From assembly GCF_006345805.1 (NCBI RefSeq), contig NC_042999.1:94116001-94180000 (forward strand): a stretch of 64,000 nt of DNA, read 5' to 3'. Under the pieces are notes generated by a model. It was not told the DNA's origin and made no database searches. It saw only the letters and a program-made list of their open reading frames with translations. The position numbers and the translations under genes are program-made. The stretch is from Octopus sinensis (taxonomy: Eukaryota). Positions 4,170-58,465 of this stretch are shown piece by piece. Every line of letters begins with the position of its first letter. The first letter of the stretch is position 1.

Positions 4170-5495
4170 GGTTTCGGCCAAGCTAGGTCCATGCCATGTC
4201 TAACTTCCTGCTGAAGTCTTTGATACCTATAGTGGTGGGGCATGGCCTAATCTAGCAAAGACATATTATTGTTGGAGACAATATCCAGGTGTAGGAGGTT
4301 CGTCAGGCATGTTTTGAAGAAATTTGTCCAGTAAACATCTCGATTTTATGAGACCCGCTTCCGTTTTGATGTATTTTGGTTTGATTTTAAAAAGGGCTGG
4401 ACCGGTTTGAGTTAAAGTAGTTGTGTCGTAATGTCGTTATGTGTTCTGAGTTCGATTTTTTGTAGTGGATGAATAGCACGAGGAGCGAGTTTTGGGTGGA
4501 TTTCAAAATTGATGCCGACAACATTTGTGCAATAATTATTGAATATTGTACGCATCGCACAAATTAAGTAGCGCTCCTAGCGGCGTTGGATAGAGTAGAG
4601 ACTGAGTTTTCTTTTAGTCAACTACAATAGCAACTCCCTGTCATACTGTCTATCTTTCTTGTTATTGACCTCTGGAGTGCTCCCACTTTCATATGTTGCT
4701 TTGTGTGGGGAGAGAACAGTAGGCAACATTATTAAAGTTGGGGTCGGGCAATTGGAGTAGAGAAAGATGAAGCTGTTGGCATCTCTAGACCGGAAAGTTC
4801 TCAGAAACAAGGATCACGTTTTGCGGACCAAGTGAACCTTGCTGTTTACGCGGGAACCCCAGCTTAGATTGTTATCAACAATTACCCCCAATGCCTCTGT
4901 TGTTGTTGGATGACGCTAGGGAGTCGCGAGGGAAGGGCATATGGCAGTTTCAGAGTATCCACTTTTCTAAAGTGGATCAAATTAAATTTATCTTCATTTA
5001 GAAGCATATTGTTCTTTTCCGCACATTAGAAAACAGTAGACAGATCCGATTGAAGGCATGTCCGGTCTTCCATACCGTTTAAGGCCATGAAACATTATGC
5101 TTGCTCAGTAGATGAAACACCTAAGGCAAGATACATATAAGGTCACCAAACTCTTTGATAAATATGTTGGGTGATGAACAAGAATTCTTCGAAGCATTAA
5201 CCAACACAATGGTACTGTTTTTGAGCTCATGTGATTGATCTTGGTACCAAGAGGAGATGACGACAATCCCAGAAAAAACTTATCTTAAAATGCGATTCCG
5301 ATCTTAAAGCAAGCACAAAATAAGGAAGATTTTCTTTTTTTTTATCTTTTATTTCTTTCTTTTTTTTTGCGAGAGAAAAGCGCTGGAAACGAAAGCGAGC
5401 AGTGTGACGCAATGAGGAAATGAATGGATTGTTAGGTACTATAAGCTGTTGAACAAAAAGGGAGAAATGACAGAGTACTAAGTGATCGGCATGGG
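4170..5495 (-). mobile_element. Degenerate CR1-group LINE 3' fragment
   Basis: The minus strand carries broken CR1 RT C-terminal motifs (FLRTFRSRD...PT...HKA) and ends in the family 3' terminus ...catggc...tggccgaaacc; (TA)n on both sides. Confidence 0.8.
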
Positions 5496-6614: not shown

Positions 6615-7595
6615 GGTTTCGGCCAGTATCGATCCAGGTCATGACTCACTCAATAGCACCATCTGGATAAATCTTTTAGTTAATTATTTCAGGATACCAT
6701 GGACCACTCAAGCAGAAAGTTCTTGTTAGTTGAGACGTATCCAAGTGTAGGTGGTTTATCAGGTATATTCTGGAGGAATTTGTCCAGGTGCCGTTTGTAA
6801 GTTGTGGGGTCTTTTCCTACTTTAATTTCTTTCAGGATAACATTGAAAAGAGCAGAACCATTTGCGGGAAAGGAATTGTGTCGTAATGTTCTTGTGCGAT
6901 GTGATTTCGACCTTTGTAGGGGACTCATTGCACGAGAGCCAAGTCTTGGGTGAGTTGTTAACATAGTACCGATATCATTTGAAAAATATTGGTGGAATAT
7001 TTTCCACATAATGCAAATAATGCATCGTTCACGGCGGCGCTGCAGAGAATCGTGTTCCAGCTAAATTGAGCCCAATAATTAAGTCCCATCATGCCGTTTA
7101 TTTTTTTAGGGATTGATCTTTGTGGCACTTCGTTCATCATTGTGTCTTCTTCTTTTTGTAGGTGAGGGTCGGAGCACAATGGGTAGCAATATTCGAGGTG
7201 GGGCCTAGCGAGTTTGGAGAAGTGAAAGATAATGGTTTCATGATTCTTAAATTGGAAAGTTCAGAGGATCCAATCCATAAGCACACTCTGCGGGCAACAT
7301 CGACATTTTTGTTGATGTGCACACTCCAGGTAAAGTTGCGGTCGACAGTAATACCTAGGTCCCTGATATTATCCGACGCTTCATGTAGGTCTCCCAACTG
7401 TAGTGAATGTGGTTGTTTGAGTGTGCCCTCTTTTGGATGGGTCCAAATTTTTCTTCGTTCAACTGCATATACTTTTTTTGTAACCGTTGAGTTACTCCGT
7501 GTAATTCCGATTGAAGCATCGTTCGATCATATAGTCCCTTAATGACATTCTGGAGCTTAGAGTAATCTCTAAATATTTTAATGCTGCTATATCCA
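6615..7595 (-). mobile_element. Degenerate CR1-group LINE 3' fragment
   Basis: ORF pieces IKIFRDYSKL, NIRDLGITVD, MWKIFHQY...HPRLG...LDKFLQNIPDKPPT are homologous to the RT C-terminus at 17945-18800; same 3' terminus tggccgaaacc. Confidence 0.85.
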
Positions 7596-7670
7596 ATGTA
7601 TATATATATATATGTGTGTGCGTGTGTGTGTGTGTGTATGTTTGTGTATGTATATATATATATATATATA

Positions 7671-17163: not shown

Positions 17164-17419
17164 TGTATGTATGTATGTATGTATGTATGTATGTATGTAT
17201 GTATGTATGTATGTATGTATGTATGTATGTATGTATGTATGTATGTATGTATGTATGTATGTATGTATGTATGTATGTATGTATGTATGTATGTATGTAT
17301 GTATGTATGTATGTATGTATGTATGTATGTATGTATGTATGTATGTATGTATGTATGTATGTATGTATGTATGTATGTATGTATGTATGTATGTATGTAT
17401 GTATGTATGTATGTATGTA
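17164..17419. repeat. Long pure (ATGT)n microsatellite (about 255 bp)
   Basis: Read directly; source of the MYVC/HTYI ORFs. Confidence 0.98.
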
Positions 17420-17767
17420 CGTACGTATGTTTGTATTTATGTATATGGATATGAACATATATATCAGTACGATATAGTAAAATAATACTGAACTTAGATT
17501 CTCTTTATCATACCCCTTGGTTTGTCTCAATCTCGGTAGGAAAAAATAATCCTTTCCAGAGTTGTAGCAGTGTTGATATTTTCCTGCTTCTGCGTGAGGC
17601 AATTCTTGCGTTTCTACAGAATCGACCACGCTACTCGCATGATAACATTTTAGTATTCTAACATAAGCTCTAAAGGAAAGAAGATAGAGCCGCGTGTATC
17701 AAAACAACACATGTGGAATTTAAAGTCTACGCACACTCAATCCCACATATATATATGTATATATATA

Positions 17768-17815
<48 letters not shown>

Positions 17816-17944: not shown

Positions 17945-20203
17945 TCACAGAGACATATCCGGTGTAGGGGGTTTATCCGGGATTTCTTGAAGGAATCTGT
18001 CCAAAGACTTCTTGAACCCTATAGGGTCAGTTTCTGTTTTAATGTGTTTTGGTGTAATGTTAAAGAGAGCGGGGCCAATTGAGGTGAAATAATTGTGCCG
18101 TATTGTTGTTATGAGATGAGAGTGCGATTTTTGTTTTGGGCGGATGGCACGGGGCCCAAGCCTTGGATGTACCTTAAAGGTGATGCCAACATCATTTGGG
18201 CAATGCTGATGGAATATTTTCCACATCATGCAGATGATGTAGCGCTCACGACGACGTTGGAGAGAATAGAGCTTTAGCTTTTCTAGTCGACCCCAATAGT
18301 CGAGGCTTGTCATGCCATCTATCTTTTTTGTGATTGCCCTTTGAGGTGCTTCAACTCTTATGATACCTTGTATTGTGTGGGGAGACCACAGTGGACAACA
18401 GTATTCAAGGTGGGGTCGGGCAAAAGTGGAGAAGAGAAGGATAATGGTGTGGATATCTCTCGACTGGAAAGTTCTGAGAATCCAGGAACACATTCTGCGG
18501 GCTATGTCAACTTTGGTGTTTATATGAGTGGCCCAGCTTATGTTGTTGTCCACAATTACTCCCAAGTCTCTGATATTGTTGGACGCCGCGAGAGTTTCAC
18601 CTGAAGGAAGGGAGTGTGGGAGTTTCAGGGCATCCTCTTTTCCAAAGTGGATTAACTCAAATTTATCCTCGTTCAGCAGCATATTGTTTTTTTCTGCCCA
18701 TTGGATAACAGCCAGTAGATCTGACTGAAGGCATGTCCGGTCACTCGCCTCATTTATGACCTTCTGTAGCTTGGAGTCATCTGCAAAGATTTTTATGTTG
18801 CTGTGCTTGATGATGTCATTAATGTCATTAATGTATATGATGAAAAGAAGTGGGCCCAGCACAGTGCCTTGCGGAACGCCACTACTGACTTTGGCTGGGC
18901 TTGATTTTACCCCTTCAACTACAACATGTTGAGATCTGTCTGTCAGGAAACACTTGATCCATTTCAGTAACTTCCCAGAGACACCAATGTTGGATAGGTT
19001 TTTCAATAGGATCTTGTAATCGACCCTGTCGAAGGCCTTACTGAAATCAAGGTAGATGACATCGGTGTTGGAGCCCTCTCCCAAAGCTCTCAAAATGTCC
19101 TCAAAGTGATGCAGGAGCTGCGTTAGGCAGTCCCTTCCATTACGGAACCCATGTCGGTTAGAGATCAGCCGTCTGTTGCTTTCCAGAAATTGGGTTATTC
19201 GAGATCTCACCACCCCCTCAAATACCTTGATGATATGAGAGGTGAGTGAGATCGGACGGTAGTTCACTGCAAGGGACTTGTTTCCCTTTTTGAAAACTGG
19301 GACAACAGACTGGGACAGAAGGTTTTTTGGAATATAGCCAGCATCCAGTGAGTTTCTCCACAGATTAGCAAGGGGAGATGCAAGTTGGTGTCGACACACC
19401 TTCACGACACAAGCAGGGAACCTATCGGGGCCTACTGCTGAATTGTGTTTTATTTCGTTTATCGCCGCTAAGACATCAGGGGCACTAAACGTTATGTCCG
19501 ATATAGTGTGTTGGGGGTTGACATCACTGATACAACCCAGATCGGCCATATCAGGATTGCTGAAAACAGAGCAGTATTGTTTCTGCAGTATCTCGGCCAT
19601 GGATTTGGCGTTATCTTGGAGAGTGCCAGTTTCATCAATTAGAGGGCCAACAATGGAGACAGTGACCCTGCGTTTCCTCGCAAATGAAAAGAACACTTTG
19701 GGGTTGAGTTTGATTTTTTCAATGGCCCACTTCTCCTCAGCTGATCTTTGGTTATTGATGAGGGTCTTCATGCATTGTTGGAGGTTATATTTTTGGGATT
19801 CAAGCAATGCGATAGCCGTCGAATGTGTGTGTTGCTGTTGGCAGTACTTTAGTTTGTTAATTTTTTTGTTTGTTCTTTTTATTTTTCTGATAATGGTTTT
19901 TCTGTTTTGGGGGATTCTGCACTTTTTTTTCACAGGTCTTGGTGGGGAGTGTTTTGCACATATGTCTGTGACGGTGTCTACAAAGATCTGCCAAGATGTT
20001 TTATGGTTGGTGGAGATGTGTGTATGTGTAAAGGACCAGTCAACATGTGATAGCTCGTTCCTGATTGCATCCCAGTTGGCATTATGGAGATCCATGTTGT
20101 CAAATGGGTGGGCTGGAGGGAGGTCACTAGGATTAGCTTTCGGCTGGTGGAATTTCATGTTACAGAGAACCATGTCATGGTCTGAAAGAAGGGTTTTTTC
20201 CAC
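17945..20203 (-). CDS. LINE ORF2 reverse transcriptase portion (752 aa open)
   Basis: Complete set of non-LTR RT motifs including IFADDSKL; separated from the APE portion by a frameshift near 20230. Confidence 0.92.
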   Translation of the reverse strand: MEKTLLSDHDMVLCNMKFHQPKANPSDLPPAHPFDNMDLHNANWDAIRNELSHVDWSFTHTHISTNHKTSWQIFVDTVTDICAKHSPPRPVKKKCRIPQNRKTIIRKIKRTNKKINKLKYCQQQHTHSTAIALLESQKYNLQQCMKTLINNQRSAEEKWAIEKIKLNPKVFFSFARKRRVTVSIVGPLIDETGTLQDNAKSMAEILQKQYCSVFSNPDMADLGCISDVNPQHTISDITFSAPDVLAAINEIKHNSAVGPDRFPACVVKVCRHQLASPLANLWRNSLDAGYIPKNLLSQSVVPVFKKGNKSLAVNYRPISLTSHIIKVFEGVVRSRITQFLESNRRLISNRHGFRNGRDCLTQLLHHFEDILRALGEGSNTDVIYLDFSKAFDRVDYKILLKNLSNIGVSGKLLKWIKCFLTDRSQHVVVEGVKSSPAKVSSGVPQGTVLGPLLFIIYINDINDIIKHSNIKIFADDSKLQKVINEASDRTCLQSDLLAVIQWAEKNNMLLNEDKFELIHFGKEDALKLPHSLPSGETLAASNNIRDLGVIVDNNISWATHINTKVDIARRMCSWILRTFQSRDIHTIILLFSTFARPHLEYCCPLWSPHTIQGIIRVEAPQRAITKKIDGMTSLDYWGRLEKLKLYSLQRRRERYIICMMWKIFHQHCPNDVGITFKVHPRLGPRAIRPKQKSHSHLITTIRHNYFTSIGPALFNITPKHIKTETDPIGFKKSLDRFLQEIPDKPPTPDMSL

Positions 20204-21173
20204 TGTAACGTTATGTATAGTGTTAGTGTGGTTACTAACACTAGGTCCAAAATGTTCTGATGTCTTGTTGGTGCAAGGACAAGTTGGGACAAGAAAAACT
20301 CATTCGTAAAGTCGAAAAGTGACTCTGCTGCTTCTTTGTCAGCGGTTGAGGCGGGAGTGCTTGGTTTCAAACAGTTTGTAGTCCAGTCAACACAGGGTAG
20401 ATTGAAGTCTCCCATCATGAGTAGGTTGCTAGAATGGCACTGTTGAATAAAGCACTTAATGCTGTTGAGAAACACACCATGCTGCAGTAATGCTGGTCCA
20501 GTCTTTTCAGGAAGACACACAAACAACAACAAAAGTGGAAACTACAACCCTATCCAACAGTGCAACCACACCTCCAGCCAAAAACTGCTCCCTAAGCAGG
20601 AAAATTCTTTTTTAGCCATGTTGAACATGGCAAAAGAGATACACAAAAATATTCTAGCCCAATTACTGTCAGGTCATTGGCTTTGTTGTGCACGGTGACT
20701 GATTCACAGTAGCCGTTGGAGAATATACTATTTCCATCTGCCGTAAACGAATCATGCAGGAAAATGGCAGTTCCACCCTTCCTTCTGCCGATACGATCCG
20801 CGCGGATGGTTGTGAAATTCTTCACTCTCACTTCGGCTTCCAAGTGGGAGTTGTCAAGGTGGGTCTCAGTGAGAATGAAGAAAGGGATGTGGTGTGGATG
20901 GTTACCAACCCAGTCTTCAATGAATTGGACCTTCCATTTTTGTGCATTGATGGAAGGGCTGACACCTTGTGCATTGAGTAGAAATGTGGAGGTTAGTGTA
21001 GTGGCTGGTTTTGACTGTTGCAGGGGGCTTGGATTTTTTGTGTGTGCTAGTGGCAGCAATGTTGGGAATTGGTGCACTGGGGTAATAGCATAGGATGGTG
21101 TTGAGTGATGGCTAGAATATTTTTGTGTATCTCTTTTGCCATGTTCAACATGGCTAAAAAAGAATTTTCCTGC
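20204..21173 (-). pseudogene. LINE ORF2 apurinic endonuclease (APE) portion, interrupted by an inverted insertion at 20468-20659
   Basis: TFLLNAQG...FFILTETHL...RADR...GGTAIF...HNKANDLTVIG | LNSIKCF...MGDFNLP...NILDLVL; the frame opens after the TAA at 21174-21176. Confidence 0.9.
20468..20659 (+). repeat. Inverted copy of 21110-21304 inserted in the APE domain
   Basis: Apparently identical apart from one AAC unit (the ORF track shows the same peptide NTPCCSNAGPVFSGRHT...KEIHKNILA on both strands). Confidence 0.95.
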
Positions 21174-22255
21174 TTAGGGAGCAGTTTTTGGCTGGAGGTG
21201 TGGTTGCACTGTTGGATAGGGTTGTAGTTTCCACTTTTGTTGTTGTTGTTTGTGTGTCTTCCTGAAAAGACTGGACCAGCATTACTGCAGCATGGTGTGT
21301 TTCTATTTTTATTTTTATTCAGGTTTGTGTGTTGGCTTGAAGCCCCGTTTCTGTTTGTGCGTCGGGTCCCTGGAAGATGAGTGAAGGGACAGTTACTCAG
21401 CAGACATGTTCTCTCACGTTGGGAATACCGGCAGATTTTGGGACTCCGAGTTGTGTGTGTTTTGAATTTCGATTTACTATTTGGTGGTGTTGATGTTATT
21501 GTGGGATGCGTGCTTTGGCCTTGGCCGGTAGTGCGTCTAGTGCCGGGTAGATGCGTGAAGATGCAGTCACTATTTGTGCAGAGTCTCTGGCGCAGTGAAT
21601 AGCGGCATATTCTGGGGTTTCTTGTTTGTGCCGTGGGGGGCGCATTCTGCTTCCTATGTTTCTTTAAGTTTTTGTTACTGCAGTGGTATTGAGGTGGTGA
21701 TGTGGGGGAAGAGAGCAGTGGTTTCCTTTTTGGTTTTTTGGTGATAGAAGACGATGGTGGCAGCGGTGGTGATGATGATGATGATATTTGCGGTGGTTGC
21801 CGTGAGAGCGGTGAAAATATACTGGCATTTAGTGAATCGTCTAGTATGCTAGAGTTGAGGAGTGGCTGTTGTAGTTCTTGTTGCTGTTGTTGTTGTTGTG
21901 CTTGACCGATGTTCGGGTCAGCCATTGTGCTGGGAACCAGGAGTGGCTCATTCTGTTGTTGTTGTTGTTGTGGCTGCTGATTTTGTAGCTGTTGCTGTTC
22001 TTGAACTGTGAAAATATGAAGAAGCTTTTCATAATGACCCTTTGTCAGTTTGAAAGATACTTCGATATGTTTCAGTTTACTACGAATCTGTTTGACGGAT
22101 CGTGTGTTGATCACTTGTGATGTTTTTTCGGCAATATCATTCAAACACAAAACATTTAAATTATCTGTTTGGGAGAGAGAGAGCCAAGTGTTTATTAAAA
22201 CATCAATTTCATTATCGGACCAATTTCGTCTGTTGCAGGCCTGCAAGTTAGTCAT
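21047..22255 (-). CDS. LINE ORF1 (402 aa from the ATG at 22255): Myb/SANT-like N-terminus, poly-Q/Ser-Pro linker, two CCCH fingers
   Basis: RRNWSDNEIDVLINTW...RSVKQIRSKLKHI; two C-x8-C-x4-C-x3-H repeats each followed by LPGTRR; uninterrupted frame at the canonical ORF1 position. Confidence 0.85.
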   Translation of the reverse strand: MTNLQACNRRNWSDNEIDVLINTWLSLSQTDNLNVLCLNDIAEKTSQVINTRSVKQIRSKLKHIEVSFKLTKGHYEKLLHIFTVQEQQQLQNQQPQQQQQQNEPLLVPSTMADPNIGQAQQQQQQQELQQPLLNSSILDDSLNASIFSPLSRQPPQISSSSSPPLPPSSSITKKPKRKPLLSSPTSPPQYHCSNKNLKKHRKQNAPPTAQTRNPRICRYSLRQRLCTNSDCIFTHLPGTRRTTGQGQSTHPTITSTPPNSKSKFKTHTTRSPKICRYSQRERTCLLSNCPFTHLPGTRRTNRNGASSQHTNLNKNKNRNTPCCSNAGPVFSGRHTNNNNKSGNYNPIQQCNHTSSQKLLPKQENSFLAMLNMAKEIHKNILAITQHHPMLLPQCTNSQHCCH

Positions 22256-22566
22256 GTTTGTTTTTCTTTTGATTTTTTTGATATATATATATTCTTTCTT
22301 GGGAGTTAAAGAAGTGTATATATATATAAATGTTCTCTCTTGAGGGTGTGAGTTTTTGATTATTTGGTTGTTTGAAGATATTAAAAGAAAAACAAGTGTA
22401 TATAACAATTTGTAGTTAAATAAAAACGTACTTACGGGTTTGTAGGCAAACACGTGGTTACAAATATATATATATTTAAGGTAAGTCAAGCTCTGAAGCT
22501 GTGTAGCTTGCTACTGACTTTGGGAGAGAGAAACAAAAGACGTCCGTCGAGTTCAACAGAGGCACT

Positions 22567-22622
22567 ATATATATATATATTTATATATATATATATATAT
22601 GTATGTATATATATATGTATGC

Positions 22623-22666
<44 letters not shown>

Positions 22667-22803
22667 ATATGTATGTATATATATATATATATATATACAT
22701 AGGTACATATATATATATATATAAATACATATATGTATACATAAATACATATATATATATACATACATACTTGTGTATATGTATATATATATATATATAT
22801 ATA
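22567..22803. repeat. Interrupted (TA)n array between two head-to-head CR1 pieces
   Basis: Read directly. Confidence 0.95.
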
Positions 22804-23200
22804 TGACGTCGTGAACGCTACATTAATTGTATGATGTGGAAAATATTCCATCAGTAATGTCTAAATGTTGTTGGCATTACCTTCAAAATACACCCAAGTC
22901 TTGGACCCCGTGCCATCCGTCCACCACAAAAATCTAAATCGCATCTCATAACAACAATACGGCACAATTATTTCACCATCTCAATTGGCCCCGCTCTCTT
23001 CAACATTACACCAGGACACGTCAAAACAGAAACTGACTACACAAAATTGAAGAAGCTTTGGACAAATTCCTTCAAGGAGTCCCGGACAAACCAACCACAC
23101 CCTGATATATTTCTGCAAAGAATAACTCGCTTCTCGAATGGGCCTTGGTGCCCGAAATGAAGGACTTCGCCAGGTGGTGCTATTAAGTTAGTCATGGCCT
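22804..23200 (+). mobile_element. CR1-group LINE 3' fragment, related to element 1
   Basis: Aligns to the reverse complement of about 17850-18250 (tgatgtggaaaatattccatcag, ggccccgctctc, caggtggtgctattaagttag.catggcct). Confidence 0.88.
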
Positions 23201-52935: not shown

Positions 52936-54129
52936 ACTTTTGTGAACCAATGAGATCATTAATAGAATTTCTGAAGGACCCTCAAGGTACTTATATACTT
53001 ATAAATGCAATTTGCACAATGCAGAGAGAATGAATGCGAATAAACCTTATCCAAATTAATAATCATAATTTCCCTTAAGGTATGGATGGATTAAATTTAG
53101 CTCTAGCCGCACCATTCTTATAAACACAAGGTAGATATTTAATTCGCTGTGTGAGCGTATGTGCACCAAGACATGTATATACGTAAGTTTATATCTTCGT
53201 GGATGTTTGTAAGAGCGAGTGTACGTGCTCCATACAACATAACTGTAGGCATTTATACATCCATATCATTTAACCGTTATATTTAATACATTTTTCGCTG
53301 TATTGTATGTTCGTTTCTTTTAGCATCTGTTATTTATTATTGGTCTTCTATAAACATGAAGCCGTATCCCTTAAATTGCTGCTTTTCTATACGGAAACGA
53401 GAAGATATTTTACGGAGCTGGTTATTTTAAAGAGATACATCTTGTAATCACCTGAAGGAGCACGTCTACATCAACAGATAAGCCTAAATGAGTTGTTAAG
53501 TATATCACCCGTGGGGGATCGATGACACATTGGTCGAATTAATTTGAGTGATTACTAAACATACTTGTATATTCCATCTTCCATCTCCCTCATTAATCAT
53601 ATATATATATATATATATGCAGGCATAAATACAGCATGCAAACACTTACAATTTGTTGCTCAGACCAGCATTACTCTAGTTTCGCACACATAGGCAAGGT
53701 ATGGCTGTTCATATGAGACGTTATTAGATGTCAACGCAACAATGATCTCTTACGGACGACTACTTTTCATCAATTTATGTATATATAAACTTATATTGCA
53801 TATATTATCTAGTCCTGATCATATTGTCGATATTCTCAATAAATGAAAGAGCCAGCGGCTATTCACTCCCAGTAATTGTGCTCATGCCATTTTCCTAGTT
53901 CCGAGACTTAAAGAAGGGGAAATTTTGTTAAATTAGCTACATCTCTGGAACAGAATAATGGTATATGCTAGGTGATTCTTTTCTTGAAATTTGTGTAGTT
54001 TGAAGGCCACCATAACTTTAAAAAGTAGGGGCCTGTCACTACACTGATGCGTTGGTGTCGGGAGTTGCTGTTTCGGCTTCAGATTCATGTCTGGTAGGGC
54101 ATGTTTTATTCTAAGATGCCCGTCGTGGG

Positions 54130-54174
54130 ATATATATGTATATATATAAATATATGTATGTGTGTAATATACAA

Positions 54175-54207
<33 letters not shown>

Positions 54208-54214
54208 ATATATG

Positions 54215-54292
<78 letters not shown>

Positions 54293-54325
54293 ATTATATA
54301 TATATATATATATATGTATATAAAT
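54130..54325. repeat. Interrupted (TA)n array
   Basis: Read directly. Confidence 0.95.
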
Positions 54326-54681: not shown

Positions 54682-57600
54682 ATGACACGCTTGATGCCAT
54701 CTTTGACAACGAACAAAGTAAAGATGGCAAGAATGGAGGCACGGGTGCTGATGAAAGATGTCACCCCCACTTGGTAGACACCCAGGACAACAACCAAGAA
54801 GATAATTCAAGTGAGAAACCTTCCCGGGAAGTAAACCCAAGTGCAAGTGCCCCTACCAGCACCAAAGGCCAAAACCATGGAGATGAAAGAGCCAAAAAGG
54901 AAGTAAAAGGAGGAAAAACTCAAAGAAAAAACAAAGGATGAAACAGCCAAAGAAGGAAAAACTAAAATTCAAACAAAACCAAAAGATGAAACAGCCAAGG
55001 ATAGAAGCAAACCTGACTATCAATGTACCAAAAAGGATAGAAAGAGACAGCGCACACGGATGTGTAAATTCTACCTGAAAGGTGTCTGCTGGCATGGAGA
55101 GGAAGGTGCAGACTGCCATTGTGCACACCAAAAACCCCGCCACATAAACATGAAACAGGGCAGAAACCAACTGCTAAAAGGAAAAGGAATGGACCACGCC
55201 CCACCTGCCCCAAAATGGAGGTACGCAGATGTGGTGCGTGCTACAAACCGCCAACATGTTATTGAAAGGGCGGCTGCTGAACAAGAATCTTTTTTGTGCA
55301 TGGCACAAAAGATTGTACAGCAGCTAACCTGGCTCCATCAAACTCAATCTCGCAGATGGGACTATCTACAATATACAAGAACGCCACAGCAAATAGACCC
55401 ATGGTGGACACCACCGGCAACAGTATACACATCACCTCGATGCTCCTACTGAACATCAGAGGACTGCTAACACTCAGTAACAGGACAAAAATCCCGTTCT
55501 TGAGAGACTTTGTTGCATGCAATCAAGCCTTATGCATAGCACTTACGGAAACACACCTGAAACCGGACATAGCAGATGCGGAAATACACATGCCACAGTA
55601 TGTTGTATTACGGACCGACAGAAAAGAAAGGAGTCATGGAGGAGTTGCTATGTACAGGACCCCACACCACAGGTCCTTTTGTCATACTCAAATTCGGTGT
55701 GTGACACACTAATTGTACATATAAGGCAATTTGGTGTAGTTATATGTGCTACATATCGCCCTCCAGATGCCCAAGCCATGTAGGCACGTTTGAAGCCTGC
55801 CTTATAAAAATAGAAGAAGTTCTAGTCACATTAGAACAACACATAAGTGTACTTGTTATGGGAGACTTCAATCTACCCAATTTCAGATGGCCCGAGAGCC
55901 TTTCTCTCCCAGGAATGACACGATGTGAACGAGGACAGGCGAGGTCCCTCCTGAACCTCATCAACAATCTGTACATGGAGCAAGTAATACTACAACCAAC
56001 CAGGGCAGGTAACATACTGGATCTCTGCTTCACAAATAATATGGATCTCATCCAAAATGTGAAAGTGACACCGACACTACTCTCGGATCACACCATGGTA
56101 GACCTGACCATGTACGGGCCAAAGGAAAGCATGGACATGCAGCCTACAAGAAACACTCAGAATCTTTCCAGTTTGAACTTCCATAAGGGAAACTGGAAAC
56201 AAATTGAGAAAGAGATCCTCAAACAAAATTGGCCTGAATGTCTCTCCTCGCTAGATATCGACATGAAACTTCAACAATTCATGTCTGTAATGCAAGCCAT
56301 ATGCTACAAATGTGTCCCAGAGAGAAAGGCCACTGTACACAAGAACAAAATCCCCAGAGAGAGGAAAATTCTAATGAGACGGCGTACAAAGGTTTCAAAT
56401 CGCCTAAACAAACAAATTGAAAGCAGGGAAAAGTCCCGCCTGAAAATAAAACTGTTGGAAATTGAAAAAACTCTGCAACTCTCCCATGAAAAACAAAGAA
56501 CAGACAAAGAAGCCTGGGCTATAGACAACATAAACTCTAACCCCAGAGCTTTCTACATGTATGCCAAAGAAACAGCTACGGTGCACTGTAGGATAGGGCC
56601 ACTCCTTGAAAAGGATGGCACACTCACAGGAAATCCAATGAGGATAAGTGAAATACTGAAGGAGCAATTCAAGAGTGTTTTCACTCCACCCCTCGGGCAT
56701 TTTCAAGTCAGCAATCCAACTGACTTCTTTCCCACTGCAGATATAAAATCAGAGGCAGCGATGATTGATTACACCAATATAAAGGAAGATGATGTAATAA
56801 AGGCTATAGATGAGATGAAAACAAACTCAGCTACTGGCCCCGATGGATTCCCAGCAATCCTTCTAAAAGTATGTAAGAGAGTCCTAGCAAGACCATTGCA
56901 GTTCCTCTTTTAGAGCTTCTTTGCAACTGGCAAACTTCCAAGAAAACTGAAGGAAGGTAAAATATGCCCTATTCATAAAGGAGGTAGCAGAGCGCAGGCC
57001 AAGAACTACAGACCTATCTCTCTGACTTCACACAGCAAGATCATGGAAGGAATAGTCAGAAGGAAACTAATCACCTTCCTTGAAGAAAATGACTTGCTGC
57101 CTGACACCCAACATGGTTTCCGACCAGGAAGAAGCTGCTTAACTCAGCTCCTCTAACACTATGACTGGGTGCTGAAACGACTGCTCAACCACTAAAATGT
57201 GGAAGTCATATATCTCGACTTTGCAAAGGCCTTTGATAAAGTCGATCATGGAATGATATGTCACAAACTGCGTGATCTTGGCATAGTTGGAAAATTGGGA
57301 GAATGGCTTCATGACTTTCTGAAGGATAGAAGTCAGGTGGTAGTAGCCAATGGGGCCACTTCCATTAACACGCAAATAGTGAGCGGTGTTCCGCAGGGCA
57401 CTGTTTTGGGACCACTACTGTTCATAATGGCCCTCTCAGACATGCCCTCAGCCACGTAGAGAGCCACGAACACAAGTTATGCAGATGATACAAAAGTTTC
57501 ACAGGCAATACAGAGCCTGAACACACTAAGCACCTGCAACGTGAGCTGCACAATATATACAAGTGGGCTGAAAAGAATAGCATGCAGTTCAATGCCGAAA

Positions 57601-58465
57601 AGTTTCAAGCTTTATGCTATCAGCATGCAAAACTAAATGCAATACCAATGAATACACTGGAACTGGAGGGATTGCAATCCCAGAGGCACAATTAGTGCGA
57701 GACCTGGGTATTTACATGAGTGATGATGCAACCTTTCATGTGCATGTTGCTAAATTGGCAATGAAATGTAGGTGGCTGACCGGATGGATTCTTAGATTTT
57801 AGAACAAGAGACCAGGAAACCATGTTGGTCCTCTGGAGGACACTTGTCCTAAGCCACTTTGTTTATTGCTCTCAGCCATGGTCACCATCCAGTGTCAAGT
57901 TAATCACAGAACTTGAGGCGATCCAACGAAGCTACACGAAGAAGATAGCCTCTGTGCAGCATATAAGCTACTGGGAAAGACTCAAGGGACTAAAACTCTA
58001 TTCCTTGGAGCGTAGGTGAGAAAGATATGCCCTAATATACATCTGGAAGATCCTAGAAGGACTTGTCCCAAACTTTGGCATCGAGAGTTACACAAATGCC
58101 AGAACTGGGCGCCACTGCATAGTGCCAAGGACTCCAAATTTGCCATCAAGATGTAGGACGAGATACTGTGATAGCCTGGGCTACCGAGGCCCACAGCTCT
58201 TCAAAATCCTCCCGAAGAACCTAAGAGACCTGCATGGGGTGAATGCAGATGTCTTTAAAATAAAACTGGATCTCTTCTTGTCAGGTGTCCCAGATGAACC
58301 AACTTCACGGCAGGAGGTGCAGATGAGGGCAGCTGCATCGAACACTCTCATGCACCAAATGGCAGTTGCTAAAAAGCATTCGTGAAGTAAAATCATGTAG
58401 CAACACCAAATGGCGGTGCCCCAGCATGGCCTCAGCTTGTGAGCTGAAGCTAGATAAAAAAAAAT
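54682..58465 (+). mobile_element. 5'-truncated CR1-group LINE (element 2), multiple stops and frameshifts
   Basis: ORF1 tail with CCCH (CKFYLKGVCWHGEEGADCHCAH); APE motifs LLLNIRG, LTETHL, YRPP, GDFNLP, LDL, SDH; RT motifs NYRPISLTS, YLDFAKAFDKV, GVPQGTVLGPLLF, YADD at 57478-57489; short poly(A) at 58456-58464. Confidence 0.93.

What the first reader, a model, noticed from the sequence alone, without database searches (positions are those of the whole stretch)
55278..55452. The same slippery-site and hairpin cassette recurs in a second, divergent CR1-group family
Seen: element 2 ORF1 reads GAA TCT TTT TTG TGC ATG GCA, with the heptamer T_TTT_TTG at 55290-55296 in the same phase. The -1 frame is again closed by a stop just upstream (TGA 55278-55280), then open for about 53 codons to the APE motif LLLNIRG. 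A hairpin again encloses the U-run: AATCTTTT(55286-55293)-TT-GTGC-atg-GCAC-AAAAGATT(55307-55314). The two families differ widely in RT sequence yet share TCTTTTTT...CATGGCA.AAA.GAT, giving SFL..MA(K/Q)(E/K)I in frame 0 and FF..HG(K/T)(R/K)D in frame -1. Inference: conservation across divergent families points to a selected recoding or translation-control element. Caveats: Z=G heptamers are usually weaker, and this element has ATGs in the ORF2 frame (for example 55440, just before the ORF1 stop at 55450-55452), so reinitiation is also possible.
Basis: partly seen in the sequence, partly recalled or inferred. Interest (0 to 1): 0.8.

Follow-up and report, generated by a model that had tools for sequence, protein, structure and literature searches.

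The report
Conserved frameshift site in LINE retrotransposons

Summary
Element 2 (+ strand) has T_TTT_TTG at 55290-55296 in the ORF1 phase. A -1-frame stop lies at 55278-80, and the -1 frame then runs open into the endonuclease motif LLLNIRG. Element 1 (- strand) has T_TTT_TTA at 21161-21155 in the same arrangement and has no ATG in the ORF2 frame.

I collected 15 more ORF1/ORF2 junctions from public contigs, giving about 15 families with 32-62% ORF2 identity. ORF2 is always in the -1 frame, with an overlap of 110-300 nt. The homologous ORF1 codons are NNU UUU UUA in 8 families, UUG only in element 2, G UUU UUA in one family, and G GAU UUU CUN/CAG in one subclade. Background codon usage is UUU 43% of Phe and UUA 10% of Leu, so this is selection on the RNA, not on the protein. 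About half the families have no ATG before the catalytic endonuclease motif.

The best reading is gag-pol-like -1 ribosomal frameshifting that gives an ORF1-ORF2 fusion (confidence about 0.65). The hairpin is not supported: it is at chance level in element 2, absent in relatives, and has no consensus structure. No conserved downstream stimulator was found. I found no earlier description of this. It is a new member of a known kind of system.

The parts
54871..55452 (+). Element 2 ORF1 remnant. It has a CCCH-like zinc finger and a C-terminal helix SFLCMAQKIVQQL. It is intact from ATG 55060 to TGA 55450-55452, with stops further upstream.
55278..55280 (+). TGA that closes the -1 (ORF2) frame 3 codons upstream of the heptamer
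55290..55296 (+). Element 2 slippery heptamer T_TTT_TTG in the ORF1 phase. The predicted trans-frame junction is ...QESFL|VHGTKDC...
55286..55314 (+). Local hairpin enclosing the U-run. It is real as a fold but not above chance (z -0.87) and not conserved.
55281..55452 (+). ORF1/ORF2 overlap of element 2 (172 nt). The ORF2 frame here encodes a Ser/Thr/Pro-rich linker.
55440..55463 (+). ORF2-frame ATG (55440-42), followed by the endonuclease N-terminal motif LLLNIRG. The ATG lies 10 nt before the ORF1 stop, so it is a possible reinitiation start.
55281..58385 (+). Element 2 ORF2 remnant (AP-endonuclease plus reverse transcriptase), broken by several frameshifts and stops. It is a dead copy.
21047..22255 (-). 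Element 1 ORF1 (402 aa). It has a weak Myb/SANT-like N-terminus, two CCCH-like fingers and a C-terminal helix SFLAMLNMAKEIHKNIL.
21174..21176 (-). TAA that closes the -1 frame 4 codons upstream of the element 1 heptamer
21155..21161 (-). Element 1 slippery heptamer T_TTT_TTA (HIV-1 type) in the ORF1 phase. The predicted trans-frame junction is ...ENSFL|SHVEHGKRD...
21130..21163 (-). Element 1 hairpin around the U-run (-16 kcal/mol, z -4.5). It is built on the two Met codons (GCCATG..CATGGC) and is not kept in relative L001.
17948..21173 (-). Element 1 ORF2 (-1 frame). There is no ATG between the frame opening and the endonuclease motif FLLNAQG. The reverse transcriptase part is intact (752 aa), and the endonuclease part is interrupted at 20468-20659.
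20468..20659 (+). Inverted, 100% identical duplicate of the ORF1 3' end (21110-21304, including the heptamer), inserted in the endonuclease region of element 1

Best explanation
Both elements are CR1-group-like LINEs whose ORF2 (endonuclease plus reverse transcriptase) has no dependable start codon of its own. ORF2 is reached by programmed -1 ribosomal frameshifting inside the last 40-100 codons of ORF1.

Proposed steps:
- With tRNA-Phe on UUU in the P site and tRNA-Leu on UUA in the A site, both tRNAs slip back one base on U_UUU_UUA.
- Translation then continues in the -1 frame through a Ser/Thr/Pro-rich linker into the endonuclease.
- The product is an ORF1(minus its C-terminal helix)-ORF2 fusion, analogous to retroviral Gag-Pol.
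- Ribosomes that do not slip finish ORF1.

No conserved downstream RNA structure exists, so the shift is probably inefficient (inference). That would fit the very low ORF2:ORF1 ratio LINEs need and would enforce cis-preference.

Shown here: the anatomy, the phase, conservation across families at synonymous sites, and the lack of ATG. Inferred: that ribosomes actually slip there, and how often.

Element 2 is a dead copy, and its UUG is most simply a decay mutation of UUA.
For: 1. ORF2 is in the -1 frame in all 17 junctions, with a 110-300 nt overlap. The -1-frame stop density in upstream ORF1 is 0.089 per codon, so open overlaps of 37-98 codons are individually improbable, down to 1e-7.

2. Anchored on the homologous ORF1 Phe codon:
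- UUU in 15 of 15 families, against 43% background (P 3e-6).
- The preceding Ser/His/Asp codon ends in U in 14 of 14 such codons (P 3e-5 given the amino acids); the one other family has CAG (Gln).
- Leu is UUA in 9 of 14 families, against 9.9% background (P 1e-6).

3. Information content peaks sharply on U UUU UUA, while wobble positions of the flanking codons are near 0 bits.

4. The seven other (non-window) families with canonical U6A share only 32-46% ORF2 identity with each other, so the site is ancestral and has been maintained.

5. Eight families, including element 1, have no Met codon in the ORF2 frame before the LNxQG motif. From established knowledge of L1 endonuclease, that motif holds a catalytic Asn (N14). 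Many database gene calls therefore start after it.

6. The T6 run is the only one in the coding sequence of most families.

7. In the L016/L019 pair, ORF1 third positions (which are ORF2 first positions) are more conserved in the overlap (64%) than upstream (35%).
Against: - No conserved stimulatory stem-loop or pseudoknot lies 5-9 nt downstream. Downstream folds have z-scores from -3.4 to +0.8, and RNAalifold gives 0 pairs.
- One subclade (L002, L006, L007, L017, L018) lacks a canonical heptamer and has G_GAU_UUU_CUN/CAG. L016 and L019 have G_UUU_UUA.
- Several families, element 2 included, have an ATG next to the ORF1 stop that could serve reinitiation.
- The relatives are single copies from metagenome assemblies of unknown organisms, not consensus sequences.
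- The families are not fully independent.
- There is no protein or ribosome-profiling evidence.
Confidence: 0.65

Rival explanations
1. ORF2 is translated independently, by termination-reinitiation or coupled initiation near the ORF1 stop, at an ATG or a near-cognate codon, as in SART1 (UAAUG) or human L1. On this view the SFL codons are conserved only as part of the ORF1 C-terminal helix.
For: Element 2 has ATG 55440 10 nt before the ORF1 stop. L010, L011 and L007 have an ATG within a few nt of the ORF1 stop and just before the endonuclease motif, and L014's ATG also sits just before the motif but about 60 nt past the stop. xFLxxLxxMK is clearly a conserved protein motif. Reinitiation is the documented LINE mechanism (PMC3708506 citing Kojima 2005 and Alisch 2006).
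Against: - Eight families have no ATG before the catalytic motif.
- Protein constraint does not explain the synonymous choices UCU/GAU/CAU, UUU and UUA.
- It does not explain why the -1 frame is kept open for 40-100 codons upstream of the ORF1 stop, starting at this site.
Confidence: 0.17
2. The T6 run acts at the nucleic-acid level. RNA polymerase II or the element's reverse transcriptase stutters on it and adds one U, so a fraction of RNAs or copies carry ORF1 and ORF2 fused in one frame.
For: The site is a homopolymer run at exactly the point where a +1 nt insertion would fuse the frames. It is the only T6 run in the coding sequence.
Against: - Base 7 is conserved as A: UUA in 9 families against UUG in 1, with background UUA:UUG about 1:1.
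- The run is only U4-U5 in six families.
- None of the 17 copies has T7.
- From general knowledge, six U is short for efficient eukaryotic transcriptional slippage.
Confidence: 0.08
3. The hairpin that encloses the U-run is a functional part of a recoding or translation-control cassette.
For: The element 1 hairpin is -16 kcal/mol with z -4.5. Element 2 and L014 also pair the U-run more than most codon shuffles do.
Against: - Element 2 has z -0.87.
- The stem is lost in L001, the closest relative of element 1.
- Ten or more families show pairing equal to or below the shuffled expectation.
- There are no consensus pairs and no covariation.
- The 3' arm is the K/E-coding purine run, and the inner stem is two Met codons (CATG is self-complementary).
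- A stem that includes the slip site cannot be a downstream roadblock.
Confidence: 0.05

Closest known systems
Retroviral and LTR-retrotransposon gag-pol -1 frameshifting (HIV-1 U UUU UUA)
   Same: The heptamer is identical (U_UUU_UUA) and in the same phase. The downstream polymerase ORF is in the -1 frame without its own start. The expected product is a fusion of the nucleic-acid-binding first protein with the enzyme polyprotein, made at a low ratio.
   Different: The element is a non-LTR (LINE) element. No stem-loop or pseudoknot lies at the usual 5-9 nt spacing. The overlap is long (110-300 nt) and encodes an ORF1 C-terminal helix that the fusion would lack.
Dictyostelium TRE5-A/TRE3-A non-LTR elements (stated to require a -1 frameshift for ORF2; PMC5911963) and the Drosophila HeT-A gag frameshift (PMC5009743)
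   Same: These are non-LTR retrotransposons for which frameshifting has been invoked to express a downstream frame.
   Different: They belong to different LINE clades and hosts. I found no report for them of a conserved canonical heptamer across many divergent families.
Termination-reinitiation in LINEs (SART1 UAAUG; unconventional ORF2 translation of human L1; cited in PMC3708506)
   Same: It solves the same problem, making ORF2 from a bicistronic LINE RNA. A few families here, including element 2, have an ATG abutting the ORF1 stop.
   Different: Here the ORFs overlap by 110-300 nt, and half the families have no ATG before the catalytic motif. The conserved RNA signal lies at the start of the overlap, not at the stop.
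2A-like 'ribosome skipping' peptides at the ORF2 N-terminus of CR1, L2 and Rex1 clade LINEs, including mollusc CR1 elements (PMC3708506)
   Same: It is translational recoding in the same broad LINE group, located at the ORF2 N-terminal region.
   Different: No NPGP motif occurs in any of the 17 junctions. 2A elements are mostly single-ORF, whereas these have two overlapping ORFs.

Membership tests
Canonical -1 programmed ribosomal frameshift signal | X_XXY_YYZ heptamer in the phase of the upstream ORF | tested here: met
   Element 1 has U_UUU_UUA and element 2 has U_UUU_UUG. Ten of 15 families have in-phase U_UUU_UUR. It is not met in the G_GAU_UUU_CUN subclade.
Canonical -1 programmed ribosomal frameshift signal | Downstream ORF in the -1 frame, open across the site and dependent on it (no own start) | tested here: met
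   ORF2 is in the -1 frame in 17 of 17 junctions. There is no ORF2-frame ATG before the endonuclease motif in element 1 and 7 other families. Element 2 does have ATGs.
Canonical -1 programmed ribosomal frameshift signal | Stimulatory stem-loop or pseudoknot 5-9 nt downstream | tested here: not met
   No common structure was found. Downstream z-scores run from -3.4 to +0.8. The 100 nt downstream of elements 1 and 2 give z -1.1 and -0.45. RNAalifold gives 0 pairs.
Canonical -1 programmed ribosomal frameshift signal | Conservation of the site beyond what the encoded protein requires | tested here: met
   The synonymous choices have P 3e-5, 3e-6 and 1e-6 against the elements' own codon usage. An information peak sits on the heptamer.
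Canonical -1 programmed ribosomal frameshift signal | Observed trans-frame protein or ribosome footprints | not testable with these tools
   This needs reporter assays, mass spectrometry or ribosome profiling.
CR1-group LINE (CR1/L2 lineage of the Jockey superfamily) | ORF2 with an N-terminal AP-endonuclease and a reverse transcriptase | tested here: met
   tblastn between the elements. Homologues carry PF14529/PF03372 and PF00078.
CR1-group LINE (CR1/L2 lineage of the Jockey superfamily) | Placement of the reverse transcriptase within the CR1/L2 clades by phylogeny (RTclass1/Repbase) | not testable with these tools
   No Repbase or RTclass1 is available here. The C-terminal motif KLKLYSL(Q/E)RRRERY resembles the CR1/L2 'LFSLEKRRLRGDLI' motif, but only from memory.
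CR1-group LINE (CR1/L2 lineage of the Jockey superfamily) | ORF1 of the PHD type (type III), reported for CR1 and L2 lineages (PMC4120745) | tested here: inconclusive
   Relatives show a PHD-like Cys/His pattern plus three CCCH-like fingers by eye. Pfam gives only sub-threshold CCCH hits, and element 1 has a weak Myb/SANT-like N-terminus instead.
Termination-reinitiation (SART1-type stop/start coupling) | ORF2 start codon overlapping or within a few nt of the ORF1 stop | tested here: inconclusive
   It is met in element 2 (ATG 55440, stop 55450) and in L010, L011 and L007. It is not met in element 1, L006, L008, L012 and L016-L019.
2A-like ribosome-skipping LINEs | D(V/I)ExNPGP motif upstream of the endonuclease | tested here: not met
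   No NPGP occurs in any junction.

The most novel reading that the evidence does not exclude
An old and diverse clade of two-ORF CR1-group LINEs (zinc-finger/PHD-type ORF1) in marine invertebrates, including the host of this window, expresses its endonuclease and reverse transcriptase only as an ORF1-ORF2 fusion. It does so through -1 ribosomal frameshifting on an HIV-type U_UUU_UUA that works without a structured downstream stimulator. This would be the first conserved canonical frameshift signal described for non-LTR retrotransposons. It would be a Gag-Pol-like solution to the long-standing question of how LINE ORF2 is translated and kept scarce and cis-acting.
Probability: 0.5. Interest if true: 0.75.

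Novelty: new member of a known kind. Interest (0 to 1): 0.62.

Why it matters
How LINEs translate ORF2 from a bicistronic RNA is unresolved outside a few models: human L1, and SART1. PMC3708506 states that the mechanism 'is not clear'.

A sharply conserved, in-phase U_UUU_UUA at the start of a long -1 overlap gives a simple, directly testable answer for a whole clade. It predicts a specific fusion protein, with junctions ...SFL|SHVEHG... for element 1 and ...SFL|VHGTKD... for element 2. It also explains why automatic gene calls truncate these ORF2s after the catalytic Asn.

It would extend the retroviral Gag-Pol expression logic to non-LTR elements. It would also offer a natural case of a slippery site that appears to work without a conserved RNA stimulator.

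For annotation, the ORF2s of these families should be modelled as frameshifted fusions rather than started at the first ATG.

Tried and rejected
- ORF1-based protein searches were almost empty: 0 hits for element 2 and 1 hit, P0001, for element 1.
The similarity between the elements is at the peptide level.
- The alignment of 17 endonuclease domains was too diverse for a locus scan.
- Scans of viral contigs and of prokaryotic genome contigs found no relatives. The metagenome scan gave 6 loci.
- The Rfam scan of the whole window gave no family.
- The hairpin-as-stimulator idea was tested and rejected.
- The 2A-like recoding idea was tested and rejected.
- The -1-frame stop sits only 0-7 codons upstream of the site in most families, but this closeness is not significant on its own (P 0.06). 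It is partly a by-product of Asn/Asp/Glu codons.
- Eight effective literature searches found no description of a U6A site in CR1-like LINEs. The library lacks most subscription journals and Repbase Reports, so prior mention cannot be excluded.
- P0038/L022 (30% identity) is a single-ORF element and lies outside the pattern.
Full report
**What is there**

The window is repeat-rich eukaryotic DNA with two full-length-type LINE copies.

Element 2 lies on the + strand at about 54.7-58.4 kb.
- ORF1 (frame mod3=1) ends at TGA 55450-55452.
- ORF2 is one base upstream, in the -1 frame. It is open from just after TGA 55278-55280 and runs into the AP-endonuclease motif LLLNIRG (55443-55463). After that it decays through several frameshifts and stops.
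- ORF1 reads GAA TCT TTT TTG TGC ATG GCA, so T_TTT_TTG (55290-55296) is in X_XXY_YYZ phase.

Every coordinate in the finding is correct.

Element 1 is on the minus strand, about 22.26-17.95 kb.
- ORF1 is 402 aa and ends at 21049-21047.
- AAT TCT TTT TTA GCC places the HIV-type heptamer U_UUU_UUA at 21161-21155.
- A -1-frame TAA lies 4 codons upstream.
- The -1 frame runs with no Met codon at all into FLLNAQG and the rest of the endonuclease and reverse transcriptase.

The two elements share only 37% ORF2 identity.

**Is the recurrence meaningful?**

ORF1 searches were nearly empty. An ORF2 search gave 49 homologues, mostly on 3.5-5.4 kb contigs from metagenome and run assemblies. I fetched their DNA and added six loci from a metagenome scan. 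This gave 17 ORF1/ORF2 junctions in about 15 families, with ORF2 proteins 32-62% identical.

In all of them ORF2 is in the -1 frame, with a 110-300 nt overlap. All share a homologous ORF1 C-terminal motif, x-F-L-x-x-L-x-x-M-K-x-D. The -1 frame opens 0-17 codons (median 3) upstream of its Phe codon.

The three codons at that point:

| Codons | Where found |
|---|---|
| UCU/CAU/GAU UUU UUA | 8 families: element 1 (with its relative L001), L008, L009, L010, L011, L012, L014, L015 |
| UCU UUU UUG | element 2 only |
| CAG UUU UUA | L016/L019 |
| G GAU UUU CUN or CAG | one subclade: L002, L006, L007, L017, L018/L020 |

**Controls**

Background codon usage in these same elements is UUU 43% of Phe, UUA 9.9% of Leu, and U-ending codons 39% of Ser, 56% of Asp and 50% of His. 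Given the amino acids, the observed choices have these probabilities, treating families as independent:
- about 3e-5 that all 14 preceding Ser/His/Asp codons end in U;
- 3e-6 that 15 of 15 Phe codons are UUU;
- 1e-6 that at least 9 of 14 Leu codons are UUA.

Further points:
- Information content across an anchored alignment peaks on U UUU UUA, while flanking wobble positions carry about 0 bits.
- The T6 run is the only one in the roughly 4.3 kb coding sequence of most families.
- The seven other (non-window) families with the canonical site are the most divergent from each other (32-46%). The families without it form one 57-62% subclade, so the site is ancestral.
- The -1-frame stop density upstream in ORF1 is 0.089 per codon, so the open overlaps are not accidental.

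**Does ORF2 need it?**

Eight families, including element 1, have no Met codon in the ORF2 frame between the site and the LNxQG motif. From established knowledge of L1 endonuclease, that motif contains a catalytic Asn. Database gene calls for many homologues start at a Met after this motif and so would encode a crippled nuclease.

Four families, including element 2, have a Met 1-4 codons before the motif; in element 2, L010 and L011 it also lies close to the ORF1 stop. Four others have one 13-40 codons before it. Reinitiation is therefore possible in some families but cannot be general.

The linker between the site and the endonuclease is 36% Ser/Thr/Pro and has no 2A (NPGP) motif.

**The hairpin**

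- Element 1's stem (21163-21130) is strong: -16 kcal/mol, z -4.5.
- Element 2's stem is not above chance: -10.1 kcal/mol, z -0.87, and 38 of 200 shuffles fold as well.
- Across 17 junctions, pairing of the U-run with downstream bases equals what codon-shuffled downstream sequence gives in most families. It is near zero in L008, L012 and L006, and the stem is lost in L001, element 1's closest relative.
- RNAalifold on 12 sequences predicts no pair.
- The 3' arm is the Lys/Glu-coding purine run, and the inner stem is two Met codons (CATG is self-complementary).
- Folds of the 90-100 nt downstream show no common stem-loop at frameshift-stimulator spacing.
- Rfam finds nothing in the window.

**Mechanism**

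The best reading, at about 0.65, is tandem -1 slippage of tRNA-Phe and tRNA-Leu on U_UUU_UUA. This would produce an ORF1-ORF2 fusion, with junction ...SFL|SHVEHG... in element 1 and ...SFL|VHGTKD... in element 2. The fusion would lack the ORF1 C-terminal helix. The absence of a conserved stimulator suggests low efficiency, which would suit a LINE. This last step is inference.

The G_GAU_UUU subclade could still slip, with the A-site tRNA-Phe re-pairing perfectly and tRNA-Asp re-pairing with G:C plus G:U. Alternatively, it may have moved to another mechanism. This is unresolved.

**Known context**

- -1 frameshifting on U UUU UUA is classical for retroviruses and LTR elements (PMC5009743).
- For non-LTR elements, the review PMC5911963 states that Dictyostelium TRE5-A and TRE3-A require a -1 frameshift.
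- HeT-A gag needs a frameshift (PMC5009743).
- SART1 uses UAAUG coupling, and L1 uses an unconventional mechanism (PMC3708506).
- CR1-clade elements, including mollusc ones, can carry 2A-like recoding peptides (PMC3708506).
- PHD-type ORF1s are reported for the CR1 and L2 lineages (PMC4120745), consistent with the PHD-like plus CCCH pattern in the relatives' ORF1s (Pfam only weak).
- I found no description of a conserved U6A site in such LINEs. The library is incomplete, so I rate this as a new member of a known kind, not a new kind.

**Limits**

- The relatives are single copies from assemblies of unknown organisms.
- CR1-group membership could not be tested phylogenetically.
- The families are not strictly independent.
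- Nothing here shows that ribosomes actually shift.

Noticed in passing
window 20468-20659 (+) versus 21110-21304: A 192-nt, 100% identical inverted duplicate of the ORF1 3' end, including the slippery heptamer and its hairpin. It is inserted in the endonuclease region of element 1, where it replaces about 14 codons (YRPP...). It could be a template-switch rearrangement or an assembly artefact.
   Followed up: partly
loci L002, L006, L007, L017, L018/L020: One subclade has replaced U_UUU_UUA by GAU UUU CUN/CAG. The preceding base is always G (G_GAU_UUU), and mostly there is no ORF2-frame ATG. This is either a non-canonical slip site or a different way of reaching ORF2.
   Followed up: partly
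proteins P0003, P0004, P0006, P0009, P0017, P0036, P0039 and others: Automatic gene calls for these LINE ORF2s begin at a Met just after the LNxQG endonuclease motif. They are therefore N-terminally truncated, because the true reading frame upstream has no ATG.
   Followed up: yes
protein P0007 (EukProt, 1625 aa): A single-frame protein model that joins a PHD/CCCH ORF1-like part directly to the endonuclease and reverse transcriptase through a linker of about 70 aa. It lacks the ORF1 C-terminal helix and carries an unrelated C-terminal extension. It resembles the predicted frameshift fusion but may be a chimeric or domesticated transcript.
   Followed up: no
window 22828-23115 (+), 6746-7597 (-), 4275-5085 (-): Three 5'-truncated fragments of related LINE reverse-transcriptase C-termini, at 70%, 40% and about 40% amino-acid identity to element 1. 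The first abuts the 5' side of element 1 in inverted orientation.
   Followed up: no
window 17164-17444, 17747-17814, 22566-22804, 54120-54320: Long microsatellites: (TGTA)70, (AT)34, and (TA)n runs. (TACA)n and (AT)n lie just 3' of element 1 on its strand and may be its tail. (TA)n runs flank both elements.
   Followed up: no
window 22255-22030 (-), element 1 ORF1 N-terminus: Element 1 ORF1 starts with a weak Myb/SANT-like DNA-binding match (PF13837, 23.7 bits, below the cutoff) instead of the PHD-like finger seen in the relatives. This suggests modular exchange of the ORF1 N-terminus.
   Followed up: no
loci L022/L023 (P0038): A more distant relative (30% identity) is a single-ORF element with its own ATG and a 135-aa N-terminal extension. 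It has no ORF1 and marks the edge of the two-ORF frameshift arrangement.
   Followed up: partly
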